This document shows, piece by piece, positions 9,647 to 50,580 of a stretch of 64,000 nucleotides of DNA. The stretch is from positions 124,001 to 188,000 of IMG/VR virus record IMGVR_UViG_3300034104_003795; one strand, given 5' to 3'. How positions within the stretch are numbered: position 1 is the stretch's first letter; every line of letters starts with the position of its first letter. The translations under genes were made by a program, and so were the position numbers. Under the pieces are notes generated by a model. The model searched no databases, was not told the DNA's origin, and saw only the letters and a program-made list of their open reading frames with translations.

Positions 9647-11212
9647 TTATCGTATTTTAAACCCAATACCAGAAAATGATATGTTTGTAGCGGAAAATGT
9701 TTTTTCAGAATTAAACTTATTATATAACACCTTTAAACTACCACCCTTTAAACTTCTATAATTTGTCCAATCGTTGTTCACACCGGTATCGTATATCGCA
9801 GTACCTGCATTTGCTAATATTGCCGATTTTAATTGTGCAGGTGTTAATCTAGGATTTGCTTCTAAAAACAAAGCACATACACCTGCTACTTGTGGAGATG
9901 CCATAGATGTACCACTAATATTACATTGTTTATATGATGCGTTTAAGTAATAGGATTGTCCACTAAATCTATTTGTATTTGAACATGCACTCATAATATC
10001 GGTACCCGGTGCGTATATTGTTACACCTGGACCTGTTTCCGATGATGTTGATTTTTGGTCATTATTTGTATCATAAACCGTACTATCAATATTACCAACA
10101 ATAAACGCTTCATCATCAAACGGAGAAGAACCTCTATGATAATAAGTTGCACCAGTACCATCGTTATAATAATTATTATAATCTGTCCCACTAGGAACAT
10201 CAATTTTATGAGAACGATTACCAGCTGCTATACATACTATAATTCCAGCATCAATCATTTCTTGAATATCAGTATCAACCGATGATATTCTTACATTTGA
10301 TATAGATGATGCCGCTGACATTAATCCAAAATTATTTATTCTTTCAGTATTAGTATCAATAGATGCTCCCGTATATGATGTTCCTCTATAATTAATTTCG
10401 GTTAATGCTGCAAATGAAGTGTAATATCCCCAACTCATATTAACTACGGTTGGTCTTTTTACACCTGTTGTAAAATTCAATGACTTATTATTATGCCAAC
10501 CTTTAATCGCATCAAATGCATATGTTGTAGAAATACCAGTACCACTATCGCCACTTCCCTCTAATCCACTTATTTTTTGAGCATATACTCTTGCCTTTTT
10601 GGCCCAACCATATGTTTTACCCGCAGCTATACCGGCACAATGTGTACCATGTCCATCAAAATCTCTATAATGATTTGCATTTTGTGTGAATGAAACTCCA
10701 CTTTCACTTGACCAGTTAATTTGTTGTACTCTACTTACTCCATTTTCATCTTGAAATTCCGGATGGTCTACTTGTAATCCACTATCTTGAATTACTACAT
10801 CCACACCGTCACCGGTTAATGTATAATTATAGTTCAAAGTAGTAGTTGTTCCACTGGCATATACATTTGAGGTAGAATTACATCGTATCAATCCCCAATT
10901 GATATAAGTACCACTATCGGATGTTGTTTTTGTAAAATCACCTGTTTGAATTGCACGATGTCCTATTTGAATATCAGTTCTATGTTCAGGTGGAATCTCT
11001 ACAGCCAGCACTCTATCATCTAATTTTAATTGCTCAGCTTCTTCATCTGTCAGCATGTACCAACATTGACGTAAAGATGTAGGTCTTTCGTTTGTAAATT
11101 CTACTCTACGATTTGGAATGTAAAGTTTGCCACCATCGGTATCACTTTCTATATCATTCCAAAACCCATCGTAATCTACATCCTTTTTTAAGATAACGTT
11201 ATATTCTCTCAT
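9647..11212 (-). CDS. Subtilisin-like S8 serine protease with N-terminal prodomain
   Basis: Catalytic triad motifs VVIQDSG, HGTHCAG and GTSMASPQVAG. Confidence 0.92.
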   Translation of the reverse strand: MREYNVILKKDVDYDGFWNDIESDTDGGKLYIPNRRVEFTNERPTSLRQCWYMLTDEEAEQLKLDDRVLAVEIPPEHRTDIQIGHRAIQTGDFTKTTSDSGTYINWGLIRCNSTSNVYASGTTTTLNYNYTLTGDGVDVVIQDSGLQVDHPEFQDENGVSRVQQINWSSESGVSFTQNANHYRDFDGHGTHCAGIAAGKTYGWAKKARVYAQKISGLEGSGDSGTGISTTYAFDAIKGWHNNKSLNFTTGVKRPTVVNMSWGYYTSFAALTEINYRGTSYTGASIDTNTERINNFGLMSAASSISNVRISSVDTDIQEMIDAGIIVCIAAGNRSHKIDVPSGTDYNNYYNDGTGATYYHRGSSPFDDEAFIVGNIDSTVYDTNNDQKSTSSETGPGVTIYAPGTDIMSACSNTNRFSGQSYYLNASYKQCNISGTSMASPQVAGVCALFLEANPRLTPAQLKSAILANAGTAIYDTGVNNDWTNYRSLKGGSLKVLYNKFNSEKTFSATNISFSGIGFKIR

Positions 11213-28865: not shown

Positions 28866-29377
28866 ACTGTTTCTATATTTTTGTTTGCAACCAATCTCAA
28901 TCTGAATACTATACCATTTATAACTCCGTCTTTTTTACTAGTCCAAGTTATATCACTATCTTTTACAAAACCATATCTCTCATAAAATAATACGGCTCTA
29001 TAATTGAATGCCCTAACGGTTAAGAATAGATTCTCTGCATGTTGTGATTTACAATATTCTACAAACTCATCTAATACTTCTTTTGAAGCATTTGTTTTAG
29101 AGTGATTTGTTGCAATTTGATGAAGAATATAATCTCCTTTCTTTTTATATGTAGTAGCATTTTTACTCATTCTACCATGAGATTTATATTTTCCAAAAGT
29201 GATAACAACACCGTCTTGCAGTATCATACCACCCTTTTCAATATACTTTTCCAACTTAAAGCCTTGCTTATATAAGTGTGGAAATATTTCAGGATACAAA
29301 TCAATAATAGTTGAAGCCTGATTTACAGCTTCAATCATTTCAGTTGTACCTTTTTCAGCTTTTACAAAATTAAGCAT
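28856..29377 (-). CDS. GNAT-family acyltransferase
   Basis: LHQIA...LFLTVRAFNYRAVLFYERYGF C-terminal GNAT signature; the CoA-binding loop looks degenerate. Confidence 0.75.
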   Translation of the reverse strand: MLNFVKAEKGTTEMIEAVNQASTIIDLYPEIFPHLYKQGFKLEKYIEKGGMILQDGVVITFGKYKSHGRMSKNATTYKKKGDYILHQIATNHSKTNASKEVLDEFVEYCKSQHAENLFLTVRAFNYRAVLFYERYGFVKDSDITWTSKKDGVINGIVFRLRLVANKNIETVCI

Positions 29378-30827
29378 ATTGAAAGAATTTATTTAAGTTT
29401 AGTTCGTCTTTATACAAATATAAGGATTTTAATTGAGATTTCAAAATATCTTTTTTAGCTTCCATCATATCACCTGTCCTACATCCTTTTGCGAAGTAAA
29501 CTTTAGGTCTATATAATAGTTCATCGGAAATCTCACCTTTGAATGCAGCTCTTAATAGTGGTTTCATATGTCCACCTTCTTTTTGATATAATGGTGGAAT
29601 ATTTAAAGTATATTCAACAAACGGTCTCCAACTATACGGAGTTCTTACCTCAACGGTTCCACCCCACATAATAGATTGGTTTGTTGTTAAGAAGTTTGTC
29701 TTATGTACATCTTCTACTAATTTTCTTCTGGCCTTATCGTAATCTTCGGGTTTGTAATGGAACGCTTGAATGTGCCCATAACTACCCCATATCTCATCGG
29801 ATAGGTCACCACTAAATACAACTTTGAATCCTAACTCATTTATCTTTTTAGATAGTGCTATTTGTGCAATTGCACTACCAACGTTTTGCCATCTACCTTG
29901 CTCAATAACATAAAGAGTTTCTTTAACCGCATCTTCAACATCCTGTTCGGTTAAAATAATTTCATGCAATTTTACTCCAAATTCTTTTGCAGCAATTCTA
30001 GCATATTTTATATCATCATTTTTAGTATCACCATCACCCATTGATACAACGAATGCTTCAATATCAGGTTTAATTTTAGAAAGAATATATGTAGTGATAA
30101 CGGAATCAATACCACCGCTAAGAATAGTACAAATAGGAACATCTGATACCATCTTAACTTTTACAGCTTCTTCCAACATTGTTCTAATATTCGTAACGAT
30201 AGTTTCTCTATCATCATTTATTATTTCATTTGGAAGTTTATAATAAGTTTGCGTTGAATGTTCTAATGTTTTATAGTTGTATTCTAAATAAGTTCCTGGA
30301 TAAATTGCCTTTACTTGCTTTTCATAAAGTTCTGATATTGGTAATCCTTTCTTTTCAGAACAAAATACCATCTTACCATCGTTATCAATTGCATACCATA
30401 AAGGTAACTCACCAACGTAATCTCTAACTACAAATATTTTATTAATTTTGGTATCAACTATTGCAAATGAAAACATCCCATCCAAATCTTTGAATGAATC
30501 AGTTCCAAATTCACAATAAGCATTAAGAATTATTTCAGTATCAGATTTTGTTTTAAATGGAATTGTAATTTTATCTTTTAATTCTTTTGTGTAATTACTA
30601 TCCCATAACTCTCCATTATATACAATACATACAGTCTTATCGCCATTCCACATTGGTTGGTTTGCTGTTGAAGATAAATCTTGAATTGAAAGACGATTGT
30701 GTCCAACAAAGACACTGTCTATCTCGTCTACAATAGAAGCATCTCTACCTCTATGAATTATTTTTTGTAAATGGGTATGGGTCTGCTTACTAGAAGTAAA
30801 CCAATTACCGCCTATTATTCCACACAT
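29370..30827 (-). CDS. Asparagine-synthetase-B-like glutamine amidotransferase (Ntn + PP-loop)
   Basis: MCGIIG N-terminal Cys, HRGRD, HNRLSI, YNGELW, SDTE, LSGGIDS and EVRTPY. Confidence 0.9.
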   Translation of the reverse strand: MCGIIGGNWFTSSKQTHTHLQKIIHRGRDASIVDEIDSVFVGHNRLSIQDLSSTANQPMWNGDKTVCIVYNGELWDSNYTKELKDKITIPFKTKSDTEIILNAYCEFGTDSFKDLDGMFSFAIVDTKINKIFVVRDYVGELPLWYAIDNDGKMVFCSEKKGLPISELYEKQVKAIYPGTYLEYNYKTLEHSTQTYYKLPNEIINDDRETIVTNIRTMLEEAVKVKMVSDVPICTILSGGIDSVITTYILSKIKPDIEAFVVSMGDGDTKNDDIKYARIAAKEFGVKLHEIILTEQDVEDAVKETLYVIEQGRWQNVGSAIAQIALSKKINELGFKVVFSGDLSDEIWGSYGHIQAFHYKPEDYDKARRKLVEDVHKTNFLTTNQSIMWGGTVEVRTPYSWRPFVEYTLNIPPLYQKEGGHMKPLLRAAFKGEISDELLYRPKVYFAKGCRTGDMMEAKKDILKSQLKSLYLYKDELNLNKFFQYA

Positions 30828-39226: not shown

Positions 39227-39258
39227 TAAATATACGATTTTTTTATAAATCTACCAAA
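39227..39258 (-). promoter_or_regulatory. Composite promoter: host-type (variant -7) overlapping the ATATTTAT motif
   Basis: TTTG-N20-TATATTTA, with ATATTTAT at 39226..39233. Confidence 0.55.
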
Positions 39259-44837: not shown

Positions 44838-45443
44838 TTAAAATTTGTGGTCAGCCGGTTCACATATCATTTCTAACTCGTCCCAATGAAATTTTGGTTT
44901 TTCATTTAGAAATACAAAACATTTCCATTTATTTGATTTTTCAAAGTAAACATGTTTTTGTAAATATGATGGGATTGCTGCCCCAGTTGGTACTCTTTTA
45001 ACAGGAGTATCAAAAAAAGTTTTTATTAAAACGGTGATTGGTTCTACATCATCCCACTTACGAATTTGTTCTTCTAACAATCTCCACTCACCTCTATTAA
45101 GATATTGATTTTGCATTATACAATTTAGATATGAAAAAGTTTGCTTCAAATTTTCCATATTATCAGAAAATGATGCAGCAGGAGCTCCATGTCCTTTATC
45201 ATAAACATTTGCTTTATAATCATCTCCATCTGATGTTTTGATTGTTGGTTCTTTGTAGAAATCCATAGCTCCTCTATTCACATTTGTAGGTCTATTAGTT
45301 GAACGATATTTAATCACTAGGGGTTGTTCTAATGATTGTGAATAAAGTACTTCAAACACTTCATTCTTAATTCTCACATCCGCTTGTCCAATTGAAACCA
45401 AAGAAACGATTAAAAACGATAAAAGAAACATCAATTTTTTCAT
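44838..45443 (-). CDS. DNA/RNA non-specific endonuclease (His-Me finger) with probable signal peptide
   Basis: DKGHGAPA and QNQYLNRGEW; likely start MKKLMFLLSFLIVSLVSIGQA at 45443. Confidence 0.85.
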   Translation of the reverse strand: MKKLMFLLSFLIVSLVSIGQADVRIKNEVFEVLYSQSLEQPLVIKYRSTNRPTNVNRGAMDFYKEPTIKTSDGDDYKANVYDKGHGAPAASFSDNMENLKQTFSYLNCIMQNQYLNRGEWRLLEEQIRKWDDVEPITVLIKTFFDTPVKRVPTGAAIPSYLQKHVYFEKSNKWKCFVFLNEKPKFHWDELEMICEPADHKF

Positions 45444-45481
45444 ATTATAGCATATTTTTGTATATAATATAAATATGACTG

Positions 45482-46765
45482 TTATAACTTTCCGTAATCT
45501 AAACCCCAACTTGCTTTTACAGGAAACCCACTACCTTCAATGATTTCCTTCAATCCTTTAACCAATTCTTTATCCACATCAGTAGGAACATCAAAAAGGA
45601 ATGAATCGTATGTGTATAAACAAAACTTTATATCACTCCCCTTTATATAACCCAATACCTTTCCCATAACATCTACGTTCATCTCAGTCTCAACCGCTTG
45701 TAGTAGATAGTTAAATACTTTTTGTGGGTTAGCCCCTTCAATCCACTCCAAAGGAATAATACGATGTGGTGTTTGTAAGTATCCCAGCTTTTGTGTTTCA
45801 ATCCATAGGTTATCAATATAATCAGCTACGGCATTGAAATATGGAATTTGGCGGAAATCATCATCAATACCACCATACAATAATTGGAACGTAACCCCTT
45901 TGGATTCATCAACACTACACCCATATTGGTCAGCTAACCATTGGTGTACGTTACCATCCGGCATTTCGAACTTAATCAACTTACCGATAAGACGAGGGTG
46001 ATACGCATTATAATCCATTTGTAAGAATATCCCATCCGATACAAACACATCTCTACTACCATCCGATTTATTCAATGCCGCATAGTTCACACCGCCATGA
46101 CGATTGGATGGACGACCGGTTACGGTGAATGGATTGTATTCGGTATATACCACATCTCCTTTTAAGTGTTTCTGGGCTTGTGGCCATCTATCAATAAATT
46201 TTTTCTCATCGACCCGAACCCCATATCCCTCAATCTCTGAAAGGATGGGTAAGAAGATATCGTTGTACCAATTATAAGTTTTAGATTTTTGTCTATAAGT
46301 TTTTCTCAATTCCGGTTCTATCGCTTCCGCAAGTTTAAGAATGGGAATAGATTGAATGACATCTTCTTTGTAACCTTTGTGTAATAAGGGAGCTACCAGG
46401 TGTTGTAGTGGTTGTTGGTAGTCTATCGTTTCACCTGTTTTTAAGAAATAAGCGGTATCAATGTCATTCAATCCTTCCCTTATATTTTGAAACGATTGTA
46501 GTAGCTTTTTCTTTTGGAATACCCACTTATCCCCTTTTGTATTTAAGATACCCTCTATTAGTGATTTAGAGAGTGATAGAGAGTCTGTATGTTGATGTGG
46601 TAGAATATATCGGTCTGTCAAAGTTCTTACGAAAATAAAGGATATATGTGTGTTTCGTGGATGTTTATCATTATCCACCCACATAGGATACCAAACCGAT
46701 GGTTCAGTTTCCAAAATCCTCTTTAATTCATCAATCTCACCAATATTTTCTACTATCCTTATCAT
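45482..46765 (-). CDS. Compact family A DNA polymerase-like protein
   Basis: TVTGRPS, motif A MDYNAYHPR, motif B KGVTFQLLYGG, NYLLQAVE and motif C YDSFLFD. Confidence 0.8.
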   Translation of the reverse strand: MIRIVENIGEIDELKRILETEPSVWYPMWVDNDKHPRNTHISFIFVRTLTDRYILPHQHTDSLSLSKSLIEGILNTKGDKWVFQKKKLLQSFQNIREGLNDIDTAYFLKTGETIDYQQPLQHLVAPLLHKGYKEDVIQSIPILKLAEAIEPELRKTYRQKSKTYNWYNDIFLPILSEIEGYGVRVDEKKFIDRWPQAQKHLKGDVVYTEYNPFTVTGRPSNRHGGVNYAALNKSDGSRDVFVSDGIFLQMDYNAYHPRLIGKLIKFEMPDGNVHQWLADQYGCSVDESKGVTFQLLYGGIDDDFRQIPYFNAVADYIDNLWIETQKLGYLQTPHRIIPLEWIEGANPQKVFNYLLQAVETEMNVDVMGKVLGYIKGSDIKFCLYTYDSFLFDVPTDVDKELVKGLKEIIEGSGFPVKASWGLDYGKL

Positions 46766-47003
46766 TCTTATTTGCAGCCTTTGCTTTTTCTAATGTTGAT
46801 TGCTTTTTTGCCAATTTAGCTTCCTTTTGTTGTTTTTTCAACGCCTTCTCATAATGAGGCGGAAACTTATTTGTAACCTCTATCGGTCCATTTGGAAATT
46901 TTTTCAAATCATATTTCCATACGGATTCACACCCATCATCATCTTTATAGGTTATTTCAAACTTTGTAGGCTTTTCTTTTGCCGGTTCTGGCCACCTTCC
47001 CAT
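46737..47003 (-). CDS. Hypothetical basic protein
   Basis: The track start (TTG at 47021) lies inside the promoter, so ATG 47003 (MGRWPEP) is preferred. Confidence 0.6.
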   Translation of the reverse strand: MGRWPEPAKEKPTKFEITYKDDDGCESVWKYDLKKFPNGPIEVTNKFPPHYEKALKKQQKEAKLAKKQSTLEKAKAANKNDKDSRKYW

Positions 47004-47018
47004 ATAAACAAATTTATA

Positions 47019-47050
47019 CAAATATACGAAAAAATCCCCAAATTACCAAA
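47019..47050 (-). promoter_or_regulatory. Bacteroidota-type -33/-7 promoter
   Basis: TTTG-N20-TATATTTG. Confidence 0.7.
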
Positions 47051-47073: not shown

Positions 47074-47460
47074 TGGTGGAGATGAGGGGAATCGAACCCC
47101 TGTCTTACGAAGTAATCATAATACCAGCATGTCACACGTTTAGGATAAAGTTTAATCTTATTTACTTTCCAAAATAATTGGGGCCGTATGGTTAGTACAG
47201 CTTTCCACCAACCTATCAGTTTTAGAGAGCCGATAGGTAGAGCTCCTTTTTGTTCACTTCTTTTTTAAACCCCATGAGTGATACGGGAGGTGATTAGGCT
47301 GCTACAGCTAAATCAGCACCCATGAATGACATTACATCATCAAAGGTCCAAGTAGATAATTCTACGTCAGTTATTGTTTTGTACAGATTTAAAGACATCT
47401 AGCACTTCTGTCTACGTGTGGTACTACCATTCTCATCGCAATCAAATCCATGGCATCCCC
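47074..47460 (-). ncRNA. ssrA: tmRNA (387 nt); predicted tag (A)DVELSTWTFDDVMSFMGADLAVAA*
   Basis: 5' GGGGATG pairs with 3' CATCTCC-A-CCA (G3-U wobble, encoded CCA). T-arm GGGG-TTCGATT-CCCC. ATAACT precedes the resume codon GAC. Tag ORF 47294..47368 ends AA-stop. Confidence 0.92.
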
Positions 47461-47471
47461 ATATAATTATG

Positions 47472-47503
47472 TAAATATACGAATAATAATTTAGATTACC
47501 AAA
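47472..47503 (-). promoter_or_regulatory. Promoter for tmRNA (variant -7)
   Basis: TTTG-N20-TATATTTA, 11 nt upstream of the mature 5' end. Confidence 0.6.
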
Positions 47504-47869
47504 TTATTTTATTTTTGCAAACTGCAAAAGATTTGGAAGATATAGTGAAAGTTTTGGCATGTTTTCTAATGCTAAAGAAATTGATTTTTTATTAGAATCC
47601 ATAATATCTTGTGGAGTTCCGATAATTCTCCATTTTATAGATTGAATTTTATATAGCCCATTCGATTGTACTGCATCCTGAAAGTAATTACTTATTTCAT
47701 ATATAGTAGCGTCCGTATCGTTTACCTTTTGTAAAAAGTATCTAACAATATACCCTACTGCATAATCATTTTCATCCGGAGTTGGGACATGTGTCTTTAT
47801 ATCTAATTGTGTAATTTCATCTTCATTTGTTGATTTAGCTCTAACATATGTAATAATATCTATTGCCAT
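47504..47869 (-). CDS. Hypothetical protein at the end of the baseplate operon
   Basis: Start MAIDIITY overlaps the upstream stop; contains PTPDENDY..GYIVRYF. Confidence 0.65.
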   Translation of the reverse strand: MAIDIITYVRAKSTNEDEITQLDIKTHVPTPDENDYAVGYIVRYFLQKVNDTDATIYEISNYFQDAVQSNGLYKIQSIKWRIIGTPQDIMDSNKKSISLALENMPKLSLYLPNLLQFAKIK

Positions 47870-50580
47870 TATACTGATTTTAATTGCTGAAAATATTGTC
47901 CGATTACGGTTGTGTACCAACTGTTACCCTCAACGGTTTGTTCTACCTGTGTTATTTGGAAAAATCCAAAGTCTCTATATTTTTTAGGAATACCAATAAC
48001 ATTAAAAGTATCACCTCTTCTTAAACCGCTTTTTCCCAAAATTTTAAAAGTATATTTTATCGGTAGTGGGTGTGATGTTTTTTCAACACCACTATATGCT
48101 TCAAATGCATTATTTTTCATAATGTCAAATAATTGAGTATCATCGCAACAATATATTTTAAAGTTTTTATTAAACTCCGTAAAACCTGCTGCGGGTTTCA
48201 ATGCCATTGGTACAATTATATTTGTAATTGGATTTGGTATAACATCAATTTTATTCAAATTTGTACTCAAAGCCGTCTCTGCTACATCCTTTGCCGCGGC
48301 CGTTAGGGTAGCAAGTTCTTTTCGTAAATCTAATAATTTGTCCGCTTCCGATATACCACGATTATATTTATTTGAACTCACTATACCACCAGTTCGTGTT
48401 TCGGTATAAACAAGATTACCTGCGGAATCTTTATATGTATCAGTTACAGTTGTAATCCCACTTCGTAATCCCGATGTTTTACTAGTTTTAACTAAACTAG
48501 CTAATAATGTATCAATTTCTTTTTGTACATCTGCTGGAGCACGAGATGGTGTTGAAGCTTTTTTGGGAGATGATGCTGTGGTTAGTGTGGTTTTTCTATA
48601 ATCCACTTCATCAAAAAATCTATCTTTTGATTTGCCAAATAATCCTCCCATATCCAATCCATGTGAATCAGGATTACTTGAATAATCTTCTCTTTTTAAA
48701 ACAATTTGGTTTGTCATTTCTTGTGGTATATCTATATCCAAAGTTGCTTCTAAAAAGATTGATTGCTCTCCTGAATGGAAAAATTCTTTTACAGTTTTTT
48801 TCTTATTGGCAAGATATCCTCTCCAGTTTTCATCAATTATTTGCAATTTAACACCGCCCTCCATTGGTATTTCAATAACTTGTAAATTCCAAAATGAGTT
48901 TACAGCAGATGACATTTCGTTACACATTTCAACCAACACATCTCTCATTGATTTATTTGATGAGTTTTTTAATGCGTTTATAAATACATTAAAATTTATG
49001 TATAAATTTTCTAATTTTCCATAATACCCAGCTTTTTCATAAAATCCATTATAATAACCACCTGCGGTAATAGTACCAGGTATGTCCACGTCTTGTACAA
49101 AAGATAATAGTGTGGGCACGTATTTGCCAGAACTCGCTTGAAACGCATATCCATCTATACGATTATCTATAAAATTTTTTGTTAAAATATCCTGAATTGA
49201 TACAGGAGTTGGATTGCAATAATATTGATAAAAATCCGGCATTTTTCCAGGTATTATTAATTTACTTGGTTTGGTAGAAAACATATTTGGAAATGCTCCA
49301 ATCAATCCATAATTATTTACTCTACAAGTAACCGATTGAGTTCCCATTTTATATGCCCACAATCCATTATTTGCATTAAGTATATCAAGTGCAGCCCCAA
49401 ATCTTATGTATCGATTTTCAGAAATCAATTTATCTTTTGGAACGGTTAATCCACCAACACTAAATTCTTTTTGACCAAATAATTCTTTTATAGAAGTAAT
49501 AAATGTATCAGCTAATGCATTAGCCACTTCTTGTGAAACTTTATAATCAAAATTTAGTAAATCCCACCAACCATATTCGTCAGTATCATATACCTTTTGA
49601 ATTATAGCTTTAACTTCAGCTGTTTGTCTATTTCCAGGTAGTTTGTTAAACATCCATTTATACCTTCTACCACCCATTGTTTTAGCTCTACCTGCACCAG
49701 TTGCAACCTCATCAATATCATTTATTGAATACGTCTGTGTTGCTGGTATATTTTTAACCTGTTTCGTACTTTTATCCAATTCTAAATAAGTGTGCTGCCC
49801 TTGTAAAAATATTGGTAATCCTGGTGCACCTCTTAAATTAATTGTTAAATTGAATATATCATTTTCCGAACTCAAAGAACCACCCACTATAAATCCATAA
49901 AACGCATCATAATCACCGTATGAACTTATTCGTTTGTTTTGTAATAAATTATAATCCAATCCAACATCGGTTGCTTCAGATATGATTGTTCCAGGAGTGC
50001 CAGTATCTATACATTCCGCAATTGATGCATCGGTGTTCCATCCATATTCAACAAAGAGGGTATGCCCCGGTTCCATTAAATATTCTTGTAAAAGTTCGGC
50101 CTGCGCAAGTGAAAAACATTTAACAGTTAAAGTACAATGTCTTGATATTTGGTCTTTACCTTCCTTTATATCCATAGCAGTTACCAACGGTCCAGGTCTT
50201 AATACAAGGTCTCCTGTCCATGGGGTTAGATACGGATAAATAGCCTTTCCACTAAAATCCACACCAAGCATACCACTTGTATATCTTCCCCCATATAAAC
50301 TCGGTGTTTGGTTTACCGCAGTAATTTGATTACTTGCATTTTTTGTAAATGAAAGGTAGTCCGCAAACATTGGTACATCTGGATTTGAAGAAAGTATCAA
50401 TCCAAAAGAACCAGATTTTCCCGCTTGTAATCTATCGGTTGCTGATATAATACGAACCCACGGCACCAATTCGGTTGAAGCCTGTGTTATATCTACACTT
50501 CCCCCGGTTGGTGCTTTACCTGATGTTTGTATGTTGTTATAGATATCGGTATCAATACTACCAAATACTGGATATGACAT
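47869..50580 (-). CDS. Putative baseplate hub protein
   Basis: 903 aa, downstream of the LysM/wedge gene; C-terminal GFFQITQVEQTVEGNSWYTTV beta-barrel pattern of phage hub proteins. Confidence 0.55.
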   Translation of the reverse strand: MSYPVFGSIDTDIYNNIQTSGKAPTGGSVDITQASTELVPWVRIISATDRLQAGKSGSFGLILSSNPDVPMFADYLSFTKNASNQITAVNQTPSLYGGRYTSGMLGVDFSGKAIYPYLTPWTGDLVLRPGPLVTAMDIKEGKDQISRHCTLTVKCFSLAQAELLQEYLMEPGHTLFVEYGWNTDASIAECIDTGTPGTIISEATDVGLDYNLLQNKRISSYGDYDAFYGFIVGGSLSSENDIFNLTINLRGAPGLPIFLQGQHTYLELDKSTKQVKNIPATQTYSINDIDEVATGAGRAKTMGGRRYKWMFNKLPGNRQTAEVKAIIQKVYDTDEYGWWDLLNFDYKVSQEVANALADTFITSIKELFGQKEFSVGGLTVPKDKLISENRYIRFGAALDILNANNGLWAYKMGTQSVTCRVNNYGLIGAFPNMFSTKPSKLIIPGKMPDFYQYYCNPTPVSIQDILTKNFIDNRIDGYAFQASSGKYVPTLLSFVQDVDIPGTITAGGYYNGFYEKAGYYGKLENLYINFNVFINALKNSSNKSMRDVLVEMCNEMSSAVNSFWNLQVIEIPMEGGVKLQIIDENWRGYLANKKKTVKEFFHSGEQSIFLEATLDIDIPQEMTNQIVLKREDYSSNPDSHGLDMGGLFGKSKDRFFDEVDYRKTTLTTASSPKKASTPSRAPADVQKEIDTLLASLVKTSKTSGLRSGITTVTDTYKDSAGNLVYTETRTGGIVSSNKYNRGISEADKLLDLRKELATLTAAAKDVAETALSTNLNKIDVIPNPITNIIVPMALKPAAGFTEFNKNFKIYCCDDTQLFDIMKNNAFEAYSGVEKTSHPLPIKYTFKILGKSGLRRGDTFNVIGIPKKYRDFGFFQITQVEQTVEGNSWYTTVIGQYFQQLKSV

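What the first reader, a model, noticed from the sequence alone, without database searches (positions are those of the whole stretch)
47074..47460. Phage tmRNA with an unusually long, hydrophobic degradation tag
Seen: an intact alanyl-tRNA-like domain, its own promoter, and a 24-codon tag DVELSTWTFDDVMSFMGADLAVAA after the canonical ATAACT upstream signal. Established: most bacterial tags are around 10 residues (E. coli ANDENYALAA; Bacteroidota tags typically also short and ending YALAA). Inference: the WTFDDVMSFM insert could redirect rescued products to a different adaptor or protease, or alter their degradation rate. The phage may be reprogramming ribosome rescue rather than just supplementing it. 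No smpB is visible in this window.
Basis: partly seen in the sequence, partly recalled or inferred. Interest (0 to 1): 0.6.

Follow-up and report, generated by a model that had tools for sequence, protein, structure and literature searches.

The report
Jumbo-phage tmRNA with conserved long tag
A 274-kb freshwater phage carries its own ribosome-rescue RNA (tmRNA), and its 24-residue degradation tag is more than twice the length of the tags of its likely hosts and is kept at the peptide level across a large clade of related phages, so the extra length probably has a function that has not been identified.

Summary
ARAGORN and Rfam RF00023 (83 bits) both place a one-piece tmRNA at 47074-47460 on the minus strand, with the tag DVELSTWTFDDVMSFMGADLAVAA. 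The window lies in a 273,997-bp jumbo myovirus that has 26 tRNAs and no SmpB, ClpP, Lon or SspB.

About 120 lake viral and metagenome contigs carry the same tmRNA in the same gene order. Their neighbouring proteins have diverged to as little as 25-50% identity. Tags are always 23-25 codons and indels are whole codons. pN/pS is 0.36 in frame and 1.2-1.5 out of frame. The 16-codon N-terminal extension alone gives 0.32.

The last 8-9 residues (GADLAVAA) resemble a normal Bacteroidota tag. All 75 sampled Bacteroidota tmRNAs have tags of 6-10 residues. A 23-mer invariant in the 14 family members aligned at that stage is absent from 185,579 bacterial species genomes. Promoters, missing Shine-Dalgarno sites and the nearest isolates point to a Bacteroidota host. 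Contigs from four lake metatranscriptome runs cluster on the gene.

Long tags also occur in other phage tmRNAs (Bxz1, Cellulophaga phi38:1 and phi14:2, LR756508), so this is a new variant of a known kind. What the extension does, for example acting as an extra protease or adaptor signal, is inferred and untested.

The parts
47074..47460 (-). tmRNA (ssrA) gene, one-piece form, 387 nt, with CCA encoded
   Evidence: ARAGORN; Rfam RF00023 at 83.1 bits over the full model; about 87% mean column identity across 26 distinct relatives
47472..47503 (-). Promoter of the tmRNA: -33 TTTG (47503-47500) and -7 box TATATTTA (47479-47472). The box ends 11 nt before the mature 5' end, which implies a short leader removed by RNase P (inferred).
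   Evidence: Scan hit TTGGTA-17-TATATT. The same motif, TTTGGTA-N17-CGTATATTTG, occurs about 18 times on the coding strand of the genome. The + strand has one loose match that lacks this consensus. It fits the Flavobacterium sigma-A -7 consensus TAnnTTTG (PMC9723704).
47454..47460 (-). Acceptor stem, 5' strand (GGGGAUG), with G3 of the G3:U alanine-identity pair
   Evidence: Pairs with 47078-47084. G:U at position 3 in 26/26 relatives and one compensatory A:U to G:C change at pair 5.
47381..47413 (-). Pseudoknot PK1 (tmRNA nt 48-80), two stems
   Evidence: 97% of cells paired against 19-62% in slid controls; 4 of 11 pairs change on both sides; no shuffle reached the observed score
47369..47375 (-). 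Resume-codon upstream signal AAUAACU (tmRNA nt 86-92), ending 12 nt after PK1
   Evidence: Read directly. Sampled Bacteroidota tmRNAs have UAUAACU directly before their resume codon GGC.
47321..47368 (-). Tag codons 1-16, DVELSTWTFDDVMSFM: the phage-specific N-terminal extension
   Evidence: pN/pS 0.32 in frame against 1.09 and 1.53 out of frame; 15 synonymous codon variants; indels only as whole codons
47297..47320 (-). Tag codons 17-24, GADLAVAA: the canonical-like C-terminal degron part
   Evidence: Resembles host-phylum tags such as GENNYALAA and GETNFAYAA; pN/pS 0.45 in frame
47294..47296 (-). Tag stop codon UAA, followed by a hairpin (helix 5-like)
   Evidence: The hairpin at alignment columns 176-200 has compensatory changes.
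47074..47101 (-). T-arm (47085-47101), acceptor 3' strand (47078-47084) and ACCA (47074-47077)
   Evidence: T-stem pair G:C changes to A:U or U:A in 3 relatives. These are the only ~29 nt that match Bacteroidota genomes by BLAST.
47504..47920 (-). Conserved upstream neighbour p138, function unknown
   Evidence: Found next to the tmRNA in essentially all related loci. No Pfam or PHROG hit. The AF2 model (pLDDT 80) has no PDB fold match.
45482..46765 (-). Conserved downstream neighbour p427, DNA polymerase A-like fragment
   Evidence: phrog_17. 65-82% identical in most related loci, with a fragment as low as 52%. Nearest isolates are Flavobacterium phages at 26% identity.
47021..47049 (-). Next promoter of the same class, for the downstream gene at 46737-47021. 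It makes the tmRNA a separate transcription unit.

Best explanation
This is a functional, phage-encoded tmRNA of a freshwater jumbo myovirus that probably infects Bacteroidota. A host-type promoter transcribes it as its own unit. It must rely on the host's AlaRS, EF-Tu and SmpB, because the phage has no SmpB. On stalled ribosomes, translation resumes at GAC, 12 nt after PK1. That adds Ala plus the 24 encoded residues DVELSTWTFDDVMSFMGADLAVAA. The tag has two parts. The last 8-9 residues, G-A-x-(x)-[YL]-A-[VYI]-A-A, are a normal Bacteroidota-style ssrA degron for the host's ClpXP-type proteolysis. The first 15-16 residues, D-(V)-E-x-S-T-[WM]-[TN]-[FY]-[DEN]-[DS]-x-M-x-F-[MIV], are a phage-specific acidic-hydrophobic extension. 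The most likely role of the extension is a second recognition element: an enhancer of degradation, or a docking site for a different host or phage factor. Shown here: the gene, its architecture, its conservation, coding constraint on the whole tag, short tags in the host phylum, and presence in RNA libraries. Inferred: that it is charged and used, that the full tag is translated, and above all what the extension binds.
For: The gene and tag are confirmed by two programs. The genome is a phage, with tail sheath, tail fibres, PolB, RNR, DnaB and 26 tRNAs. The G3:U pair is invariant, and compensatory changes occur in the acceptor stem, T-arm, helix 2 and PK1. The order p903-p138-tmRNA-p427-nuclease recurs in about 85 viral loci. 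Their flanking proteins are 25-50% (p903) and about 36-56% (p138, a few close relatives higher) identical, while the tmRNA keeps about 87% mean column identity. There are 22 distinct tag-coding sequences and 13 peptide variants, all 23-25 codons. pN/pS is 0.36 in frame and 1.16 and 1.47 out of frame. Variable sites by codon position are 10, 11 and 20. The extension alone gives 0.32. A more divergent 366-370-nt subfamily in more distant phages keeps the same tag. The resume signal is the same as in host-phylum tmRNAs. Tags in 75 of 75 Bacteroidota tmRNAs are 6-10 aa. A 23-mer invariant in the 14 family members aligned at that stage has 0 hits in 185,579 species genomes and at least 81 in viral contigs. 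In 4 metatranscriptome runs, contigs concentrate on 47108-47509. Pieces with zero differences (47226-47394 and 47248-47351) together cover the whole tag ORF.
Against: No experiment or read-level data show charging, the 5' and 3' ends, or tagged peptides. The RNA data are assembled contigs, which cannot give expression level or strand, and some come from relatives. The host is inferred rather than known. No candidate partner for the extension was found. The phage lacks SmpB, SspB, ClpP and Lon, and its AAA proteins are a clamp loader, a STAND-like protein and a MoxR-like protein. RNAalifold draws a hairpin with compensatory changes inside the extension (nt 115-142), so part of the conservation may be RNA-level. 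The extension is not significantly amphipathic as a helix. The sequences are related to each other, so pooled pairwise pN/pS is not an independent-sample statistic.
Confidence: 0.6

Rival explanations
1. Translation resumes further downstream, at GGU (nt 141). The real tag is then the normal-length GADLAVAA, and the preceding 48 nt are an untranslated spacer or RNA hairpin.
For: The last 8-9 codons look like a complete Bacteroidota tag that starts with G. ARAGORN chose a downstream start, giving ADEYAYAA, for one relative, L018. RNAalifold predicts a hairpin with compensatory changes at nt 115-142.
Against: The extension alone has pN/pS 0.32 in frame against 1.09 and 1.53 out of frame, with 15 synonymous codon variants. 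Length differences are whole codons. AAUAACU|GAC lies 12 nt after PK1, as in host tmRNAs where UAUAACU precedes GGC. No such signal precedes GGU. Both other frames hit stops almost at once.
Confidence: 0.1
2. The full tag is translated, but the extension does not aid degradation. Instead it blocks, saturates or diverts host proteases, or it marks products for a non-proteolytic fate such as binding a phage factor or recycling.
For: The motif is strongly conserved, yet there is no recognisable adaptor or protease in the phage. Acidic-hydrophobic long tags recur in unrelated phage tmRNAs.
Against: The canonical A-x-A-A degron end is retained and under constraint. The simplest reading is that degradation still matters. 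There is no direct evidence for any inhibitory activity.
Confidence: 0.2
3. The RNA acts mainly as a decoy that titrates host SmpB or inhibits host trans-translation, as proposed for the TLD-only RNA of mycobacteriophage DS6A. On this view the ORF is irrelevant.
For: The phage has no SmpB of its own. DS6A is a precedent (PMC4131195; PMC11915505).
Against: The molecule is full length, with PK1, a resume signal, an ORF and a stop. The ORF shows coding constraint across many phages.
Confidence: 0.05
4. The gene is a recently captured host tmRNA or an integration-site remnant, and its tag simply reflects an unsampled host lineage that has long tags.
For: Many phages integrate at ssrA. The 27-nt 3' end is shared with many bacterial-type tmRNAs. 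The host is not known directly.
Against: The gene is internal to a 274-kb genome, with a phage-type promoter. It is syntenic in about 85 diverged phage contigs. A conserved 23-mer has 0 hits in 185,579 species genomes. BLAST against 401 Bacteroidota genomes matches only about 29 nt. Host-phylum tags are short in 75 of 75 genomes.
Confidence: 0.05

Closest known systems
Canonical one-piece bacterial tmRNA (Rfam RF00023), Bacteroidota type, with tags such as GENNYALAA
   Same: It has a tRNA-like domain with G3:U, a T-arm and CCA. It has helix 2 and PK1. The signal (U/A)AUAACU precedes the resume codon at about nt 93. The tag ends in A-x-A-A, followed by a stop and a hairpin.
   Different: The tag is 24 residues rather than 6-10, through a 15-16-codon insertion at its 5' side. 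The RNA body is at most 67% identical to sampled host-phylum tmRNAs, and only about 29 nt match by BLAST. It is encoded by a phage that has no smpB.
Mycobacteriophage Bxz1 tmRNA
   Same: It is a phage-encoded one-piece tmRNA in a large myovirus that carries many tRNAs. Its tag is long and acidic-hydrophobic: ATDTDATVTDAEIEAFFAEEAAALV, 25 aa.
   Different: The RNA and tag sequences are unrelated and the host phylum is different (Actinomycetota). The Bxz1 tag ends in ALV rather than A-x-A-A. I found no published analysis of its tag function in the library searched.
tmRNAs of Cellulophaga phages phi38:1 and phi14:2 (cultured Bacteroidota phages)
   Same: These are phage tmRNAs in Bacteroidota hosts with long tags. 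phi38:1 has 22-25 aa. phi14:2 has an in-frame ORF of up to 34 aa.
   Different: They carry a different motif, Q[IL]xANMxxVxxILN, and end in VGV or MVA. The phage families are different (Pervagoviridae, Crassvirales). The phi14:2 RNA scores just below the Rfam threshold.
Mollicutes ssrA tags (about 27 aa, e.g. Mesoplasma florum) recognised by Lon
   Same: These tags are much longer than the usual 10 aa, and in this case the length goes with a switch of protease (PMC9382460).
   Different: That switch occurs in bacteria that lack active ClpXP, and those tags end in NYAFA. Here the probable host phylum has ClpP and Lon: the Bacteroides control matches both. The tag also keeps a ClpX-style A-x-A-A end.
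E. coli ssrA tag with the SspB adaptor (bipartite recognition)
   Same: The concept is the same: the C-terminal residues are read by the protease and the upstream residues by a second factor (established knowledge; PMC9963277 listed).
   Different: No SspB family member is present in the phage. The Pfam SspB model matched only the E. coli and Caulobacter controls, not Bacteroides. The upstream part here is 16 residues long and unrelated in sequence.

Membership tests
tmRNA (RF00023, one-piece) | Covariance-model match above the curated threshold over the full length | tested here: met
   83.1 bits against a gathering score of 47, model positions 1-374
tmRNA (RF00023, one-piece) | tRNA-Ala-like domain: 7-bp acceptor stem with G3:U, T-arm, 3' CCA | tested here: met
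   G:U at pair 3 in 26/26 relatives; compensatory changes in the acceptor stem and T-stem; ACCA encoded
tmRNA (RF00023, one-piece) | Pseudoknot PK1 just upstream of the resume codon | tested here: met
   11 pairs, 97% of cells paired, 4 pairs with changes on both sides, slid controls 19-62%. It ends 12 nt before GAC.
tmRNA (RF00023, one-piece) | Short ORF with no start codon, entered at a resume codon after a conserved A-rich signal, ending in a hydrophobic A-x-A-A and a stop | tested here: met
   AAUAACU|GAC...GCA GCC UAA; coding constraint in this frame only
tmRNA (RF00023, one-piece) | Pseudoknots PK2-PK4 downstream of the ORF | tested here: inconclusive
   The Rfam alignment has low posterior probability in this region. 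RNAalifold finds hairpins with covariation there but cannot model pseudoknots. I did not build these by hand.
tmRNA (RF00023, one-piece) | SmpB partner protein | tested here: not met
   No PF01668 match at E<=1 in the six-frame translation of the whole 274-kb phage genome. The phage must use the host's SmpB, and that could not be tested here. This does not affect membership of the RNA family.
tmRNA (RF00023, one-piece) | Expressed as a stable RNA, charged with alanine and active in trans-translation | tested here: inconclusive
   Contigs from 4 metatranscriptome runs pile up on the gene and not on its flanks. Contigs cannot show ends or level. Charging and tagging cannot be tested with these tools.
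Mollicutes-type Lon-directed long ssrA tag | Host lacks ClpXP and the tag ends in the Lon-recognised NYAFA-type motif | tested here: not met
   The tag ends in LAVAA or YAYAA. The Bacteroides control genome matches both ClpP and Lon. I do not file the tag in this family.
Phage-encoded tmRNAs with long tags (Bxz1-like; an informal group) | tmRNA internal to a phage genome, with a tag at least about twice as long as the host's | tested here: met
   The gene is internal to a complete jumbo-phage genome. The tag is 24 aa against 6-10 aa in 75 Bacteroidota. Comparable cases: Bxz1 25 aa, phi38:1 22-25 aa, LR756508 36 aa by my reading of the frame.

The most novel reading that the evidence does not exclude
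Long, lineage-specific tags under purifying selection may be a general and so far unstudied property of phage-encoded tmRNAs. This clade, Bxz1, the Cellulophaga phages, LR756508 and others all show them. On this reading the extension is a phage-specific interaction motif that separates phage-tagged from host-tagged products. It could route them to a different protease or adaptor, speed amino-acid recycling during host shut-off, or tie up the host proteolytic machinery. That would make it true reprogramming of ribosome-rescue output rather than extra rescue capacity.
Probability: 0.3. Interest if true: 0.8.

Novelty: new variant of a known kind. Interest (0 to 1): 0.6.

Why it matters
tmRNA tags are a textbook degron, and their commonest length is 10 residues (PMC11915505). 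The one known large departure, in Mollicutes, marks a change of protease. Here a widespread clade of lake jumbo phages keeps a tag 2.5 times the length of the probable host's, with clear peptide-level constraint on the extra part. Other phage tmRNAs show the same tendency. If the extension is a second signal, phages are editing the output of the host's quality-control pathway. The motifs would also be a source of new orthogonal degrons. The question can be tested directly, because cultured Bacteroidota phage-host pairs with long-tag tmRNAs exist (Cellulophaga phi38:1).

Tried and rejected
1. A similarity search of the tmRNA against 50,697 phage records found only a 31-nt 3'-end match. The two other long-tag viral tmRNAs and a Flavobacterium host tmRNA found nothing useful there either.

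I obtained Bacteroidota genome handles through a 16S signature scan instead. That used the last genome-contig scan, so no other phylum was sampled.

3. I tested whether the conserved neighbour p138 is a hidden SmpB or SspB. It has no Pfam or PHROG hit. The AF2 model (pLDDT 80) is a three-strand alpha/beta fold with no PDB match (best Foldseek E 0.22). I rejected the idea as far as this test goes. VIA-align was not run.

4. I tested for phage-encoded proteolysis partners. There is no ClpP, Lon_C or SspB. The three AAA proteins are a clamp loader, a STAND-like protein and a MoxR/CbbQ-like protein. The PHROG 'protease' hit at 9647-11212 is a subtilase S8.

5. I tested whether the extension is an amphipathic helix. 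Its hydrophobic moment at 100 degrees is not above shuffled sequences (p 0.13-0.48), so I make no such claim.

6. A search of the phage's six-frame translation for the tag motif found only the tag itself.

7. Table S1 of Buchholz et al. lists phages with tmRNAs but gives no tag sequences. Literature searches found no paper that analyses long phage tags.

8. Complex prediction was not used, because the tag (24 aa) is below the tool's 30-residue minimum.

Full report
**Observation.** ARAGORN finds a single tmRNA in the window, at 47074-47460 on the minus strand. Its tag is DVELSTWTFDDVMSFMGADLAVAA*. Rfam RF00023 matches the same interval from model position 1 to 374, at 83.1 bits against a gathering score of 47 and E 9.5e-31.

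**What the genome is.** The window is bases 124001-188000 of a 273,997-bp virus record that CheckV rates as complete.
- Almost all genes lie on one strand.
- The window holds a tail sheath, tail fibres, a family-B DNA polymerase, ribonucleotide reductase and a DnaB helicase. This makes it a jumbo myovirus.
- Outside the window there is an array of 26 tRNAs at 85-92 kb. This is the only tmRNA in the genome.
- The phage occurs in lake and freshwater metagenomes from at least 13 studies.

**Probable host.** Three indirect signals point to Bacteroidota.
- A promoter motif, TTTGGTA-N17-CGTATATTTG, occurs about 18 times on the coding strand. The other strand has one loose match that lacks this consensus. 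It fits the Flavobacterium sigma-A -7 box TAnnTTTG (PMC9723704).
- Shine-Dalgarno cores are not enriched upstream of 194 ORFs (6.7% against 7.8% background), and the leaders are A-rich. This is the pattern reported for Bacteroidota (PMC6847099, listed).
- The nearest isolates for the neighbouring polymerase-like gene are Flavobacterium phages at 26% identity. A Microcystis phage also hits, at 27.6%.

The host is therefore inferred, not known.

**Anatomy of the RNA.** An alignment of 26 distinct relatives and its consensus fold show the following.
- The acceptor stem has G3:U in 26 of 26 sequences.
- Compensatory changes occur in the acceptor stem, the T-stem and helix 2.
- A hairpin with covariation follows the stop codon.

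I wrote PK1 in by hand. It has 11 pairs, 97% of cells paired against 19-62% when the 3' partners are slid, and four pairs that change on both sides. PK1 ends at nt 80. AAUAACU occupies nt 86-92, and GAC starts at nt 93. Sampled Bacteroidota tmRNAs have UAUAACU directly before their resume codon GGC, and ARAGORN places their resume codons at nt 90-103. One copy of the phage promoter motif lies directly upstream (-7 box at 47479-47472). A second copy lies just downstream for the next gene. The tmRNA is therefore its own transcription unit.

**A large, phage-only family.**
- A 23-mer invariant in the 14 family members aligned at that stage has no exact match in one genome each of 185,579 bacterial and archaeal species. 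A further 38 metagenome contigs matched a second pattern.
- In about 85 loci the gene order p903, p138, tmRNA, (p94), p427, nuclease, p1412 is kept. The flanking proteins are diverged: p903 is mostly 25-50% identical, p138 about 36-56%, and p427 65-82% in most loci, with a fragment as low as 52%. The tmRNA keeps about 87% mean column identity.
- A shorter subfamily of 366-370 nt, in more distant phages and with a different PK1 sequence, carries the same tag.

**Is the whole tag translated?** Across the family there are 22 distinct tag-coding sequences and 13 peptide variants, all of 23-25 codons. Every length difference is a whole codon.

| Region | pN/pS in frame | Frame +1 | Frame +2 | Variable sites by codon position |
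|---|---|---|---|---|
| Whole tag | 0.36 | 1.16 | 1.47 | 10 / 11 / 20 |
| First 16 codons | 0.32 | 1.09 | 1.53 | 7 / 7 / 11 |
| C-terminal part | 0.45 | 1.29 | 1.25 | 3 / 4 / 9 |

This matters because the last 8-9 residues (GADLAVAA, GASEYAYAA, GMDYAVAA) look like a complete Bacteroidota tag on their own. A downstream resume codon was therefore a serious rival. The first 16 codons taken alone show the same constraint and carry 15 synonymous codon variants. Both other frames hit stop codons within a few codons.

Together with the position of the resume signal, this makes resumption at GAC the best reading. The tag is a canonical-like end plus a 15-16-residue N-terminal extension. Its consensus is D-(V)-E-x-S-T-[WM]-[TN]-[FY]-[DEN]-[DS]-x-M-x-F-[MIV]-G-[AM]-(x)-[DEN]-(E)-[YL]-A-[VYI]-A-A.

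There are two caveats. The sequences are related to each other, so pooled pairwise ratios are descriptive rather than independent. RNAalifold also draws a hairpin with compensatory changes inside the extension (nt 115-142), so an RNA-level constraint may act alongside the coding one.

**Host-lineage tags.**
- In 151 genomes drawn evenly from the GTDB phylum of a Flavobacterium MAG, 147 had a tmRNA match and 144 scored over the Rfam cut-off.
- I ran ARAGORN on 75 of them. All tags are 6-10 residues. The commonest are GENNYALAA, ADDYSYAMAA and DNNYSYRLAA.
- The best global identity to the phage tmRNA is 67%.
- BLAST of the phage tmRNA against 401 genomes of the phylum matches only the 3' ~29 nt.
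- The tmRNA database paper gives 10 aa as the commonest tag length overall (PMC11915505).

Other phyla were not sampled.

**Expression.** Six lake metatranscriptome runs hold 6-8% of the words of a 4-kb stretch around the gene, which is roughly the size of the tmRNA. I laid four of them on the stretch. Their contigs concentrate on 47108-47509, at depths of about 6 to 122 per bin, against 0-12 on the flanking genes. Two pieces with no differences, 47226-47394 and 47248-47351, together cover the whole tag ORF. Contigs cannot give RNA ends, strand or true level, and some pieces come from relatives. This is support for a stable, abundant RNA, not proof.

**Partners.** The phage genome has no SmpB and no ClpP, Lon protease domain or SspB.
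- Its three AAA proteins are a clamp loader, a STAND-like NTPase and a MoxR/CbbQ-like ATPase.
- A PHROG 'protease' hit turned out to be a subtilase.
- The conserved neighbour p138 folds with confidence (pLDDT 80) but matches no solved structure. It is not an SmpB-like barrel.
- The tag motif occurs nowhere else in the six-frame translation of the genome.
- The extension is acidic (net charge -5) and rich in aromatic and Met residues. Its helical hydrophobic moment is not above shuffled controls.

**Other phage tmRNAs.** Long tags are not unique to this clade.

| Phage or contig | Tag | Basis |
|---|---|---|
| Mycobacteriophage Bxz1 | ATDTDATVTDAEIEAFFAEEAAALV, 25 aa | ARAGORN |
| Cellulophaga phage phi38:1 | 22 aa, or 25 if resumption is three codons earlier | ARAGORN; the longer form is my reading of the frame |
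| Cellulophaga phage phi14:2 (crAss-like) | in-frame ORF of up to 34 aa, sharing the motif Q[IL]xANMxxVxxILN with phi38:1 | my reading of the frame |
| LR756508 (484-kb phage) | 36-aa frame after UAUAACU that contains FTAEDFAQMDG | my reading of the frame; ARAGORN chose another site |
| IMG/VR lineage L060/L078 | 21 aa | ARAGORN |
| IMG/VR lineage L064/L066 | 25 aa by ARAGORN; 35 aa if resumption is at the upstream GCA | ARAGORN; the longer form is my reading of the frame |
| Bacillus phage G | 13 aa, an ordinary length | ARAGORN |

I found no paper in the searchable library that analyses this pattern. Phage tmRNAs as such are well known. They occur in 2.3% of phage genomes (PMC9004378) and in huge phages (PMC7162821).

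**Mechanism.** The most likely account is as follows. Host RNA polymerase transcribes the gene from a sigma-A-type promoter, and RNase P trims a short leader. Host AlaRS charges the RNA through G3:U. Host SmpB and EF-Tu deliver it to stalled ribosomes. Stalled ribosomes should be plentiful if the phage degrades host nucleic acids, and a non-specific DNA/RNA endonuclease gene lies two genes away. The ribosome then adds Ala plus the 24 encoded residues. The A-x-A-A end presents a ClpXP-type degron. The conserved extension supplies a second determinant.

The gene, its structure, its conservation, the coding constraint and the contrast with host tags are shown. Everything from charging onward is inferred from established tmRNA biology. 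The role of the extension is a hypothesis. Its closest precedents are the SspB-binding half of the E. coli tag and the Lon-directed long tags of Mollicutes (PMC9382460). I do not file this tag under the Mollicutes type. Its end differs, and the host phylum has ClpP and Lon.

**Verdict.** This is a new variant of a known kind. The wider pattern, long lineage-specific tags in phage tmRNAs, may be the more interesting result.

**Limits.**
- The host is inferred.
- Only one phylum was sampled for host tags.
- The RNA evidence comes from contigs.
- No structure or complex prediction was possible for a 24-residue peptide.

Noticed in passing
window 47502-47474, 47049-47021, and starts near 39257, 38279, 26422, 9585 (minus strand); about 18 sites genome-wide: A sharply conserved phage promoter motif, TTTGGTA-N17-(T)CGTATATTTGTA, occurs about 18 times on the coding strand, against one loose, non-consensus match on the other strand. 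It matches the Bacteroidota sigma-A pattern (-33 TTTG, -7 TAnnTTTG) and probably marks genes read by host polymerase.
   Followed up: partly
G000:C1:85230-92009 (outside the window): An array of 26 tRNA genes covers nearly all amino acids and includes three tRNA-Met-like genes. All are on the same strand as the tmRNA.
   Followed up: no
whole genome, 194 ORFs of at least 120 aa: There is no Shine-Dalgarno enrichment upstream of start codons (6.7% against 7.8% background). Leaders are strongly A-rich at -12 to -10. This is the Bacteroidota style of translation initiation.
   Followed up: partly
window 47319-47346 (tmRNA nt 115-142, inside the tag ORF): RNAalifold predicts a hairpin inside the tag-coding extension, with several pairs that change on both sides. 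An RNA-structure constraint may overlap the coding constraint.
   Followed up: partly
LR756508.1:92434-92880 (locus L399): The tmRNA of this 484-kb uncultured huge phage has a 36-codon open frame after UAUAACU (GVNNADYESAGFTAEDFAQMDGESLYHGSERKPAAV). ARAGORN picked a different 8-aa tag and flagged it as not identified.
   Followed up: partly
NC_021796.1:26803-27164 (L410) and NC_021806.1:4031-4502 (L411): Two cultured, unrelated Cellulophaga phages, phi38:1 and the crAss-like phi14:2, carry tmRNAs whose long tag frames share the motif Q[IL]xANMxxVxxILN. They offer a cultured system for testing long phage tags.
   Followed up: partly
L064/L066 and L060/L078 (IMG/VR contigs): Two further viral tmRNA lineages share the same 27-nt 3' end but have different bodies and long tags. 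One reads ...NNADEFLGGVEEEYCALAA, possibly 35 aa from an upstream GCA. The other reads GNILDKMSAIGLIRAEEVVVA.
   Followed up: no
L013, L023, L054, L067 (IMG/VR contigs): A 366-370-nt subfamily in more distant phages has a shortened middle region and a changed PK1 but keeps the tag DEKSTMTYNDLMAFVGMDYAVAA. Here the frame is also open upstream of GAC (AAA before it), and ARAGORN did not call these genes.
   Followed up: partly
window 47504-47920 (minus strand): p138 lies directly upstream of the tmRNA in essentially all relatives. It has the conserved motifs PxPTxxDYxxGYIxRYFIQKxND and YLPNLLQF, a confident AF2 model, and no Pfam, PHROG or PDB fold match.
   Followed up: partly
window 44838-45509 and 45482-46765 (minus strand): A DNA/RNA non-specific endonuclease (PF01223) and a 427-aa protein that matches only the C-terminal part of a PolA-like PHROG lie just downstream of the tmRNA. 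The nuclease could generate the truncated mRNAs that a tmRNA rescues.
   Followed up: no
window 9647-11212, 29370-30827; G000:C1:108566-109771: The phage encodes a subtilase (Peptidase_S8), an asparagine synthase and a MoxR/CbbQ-type AAA ATPase.
   Followed up: no
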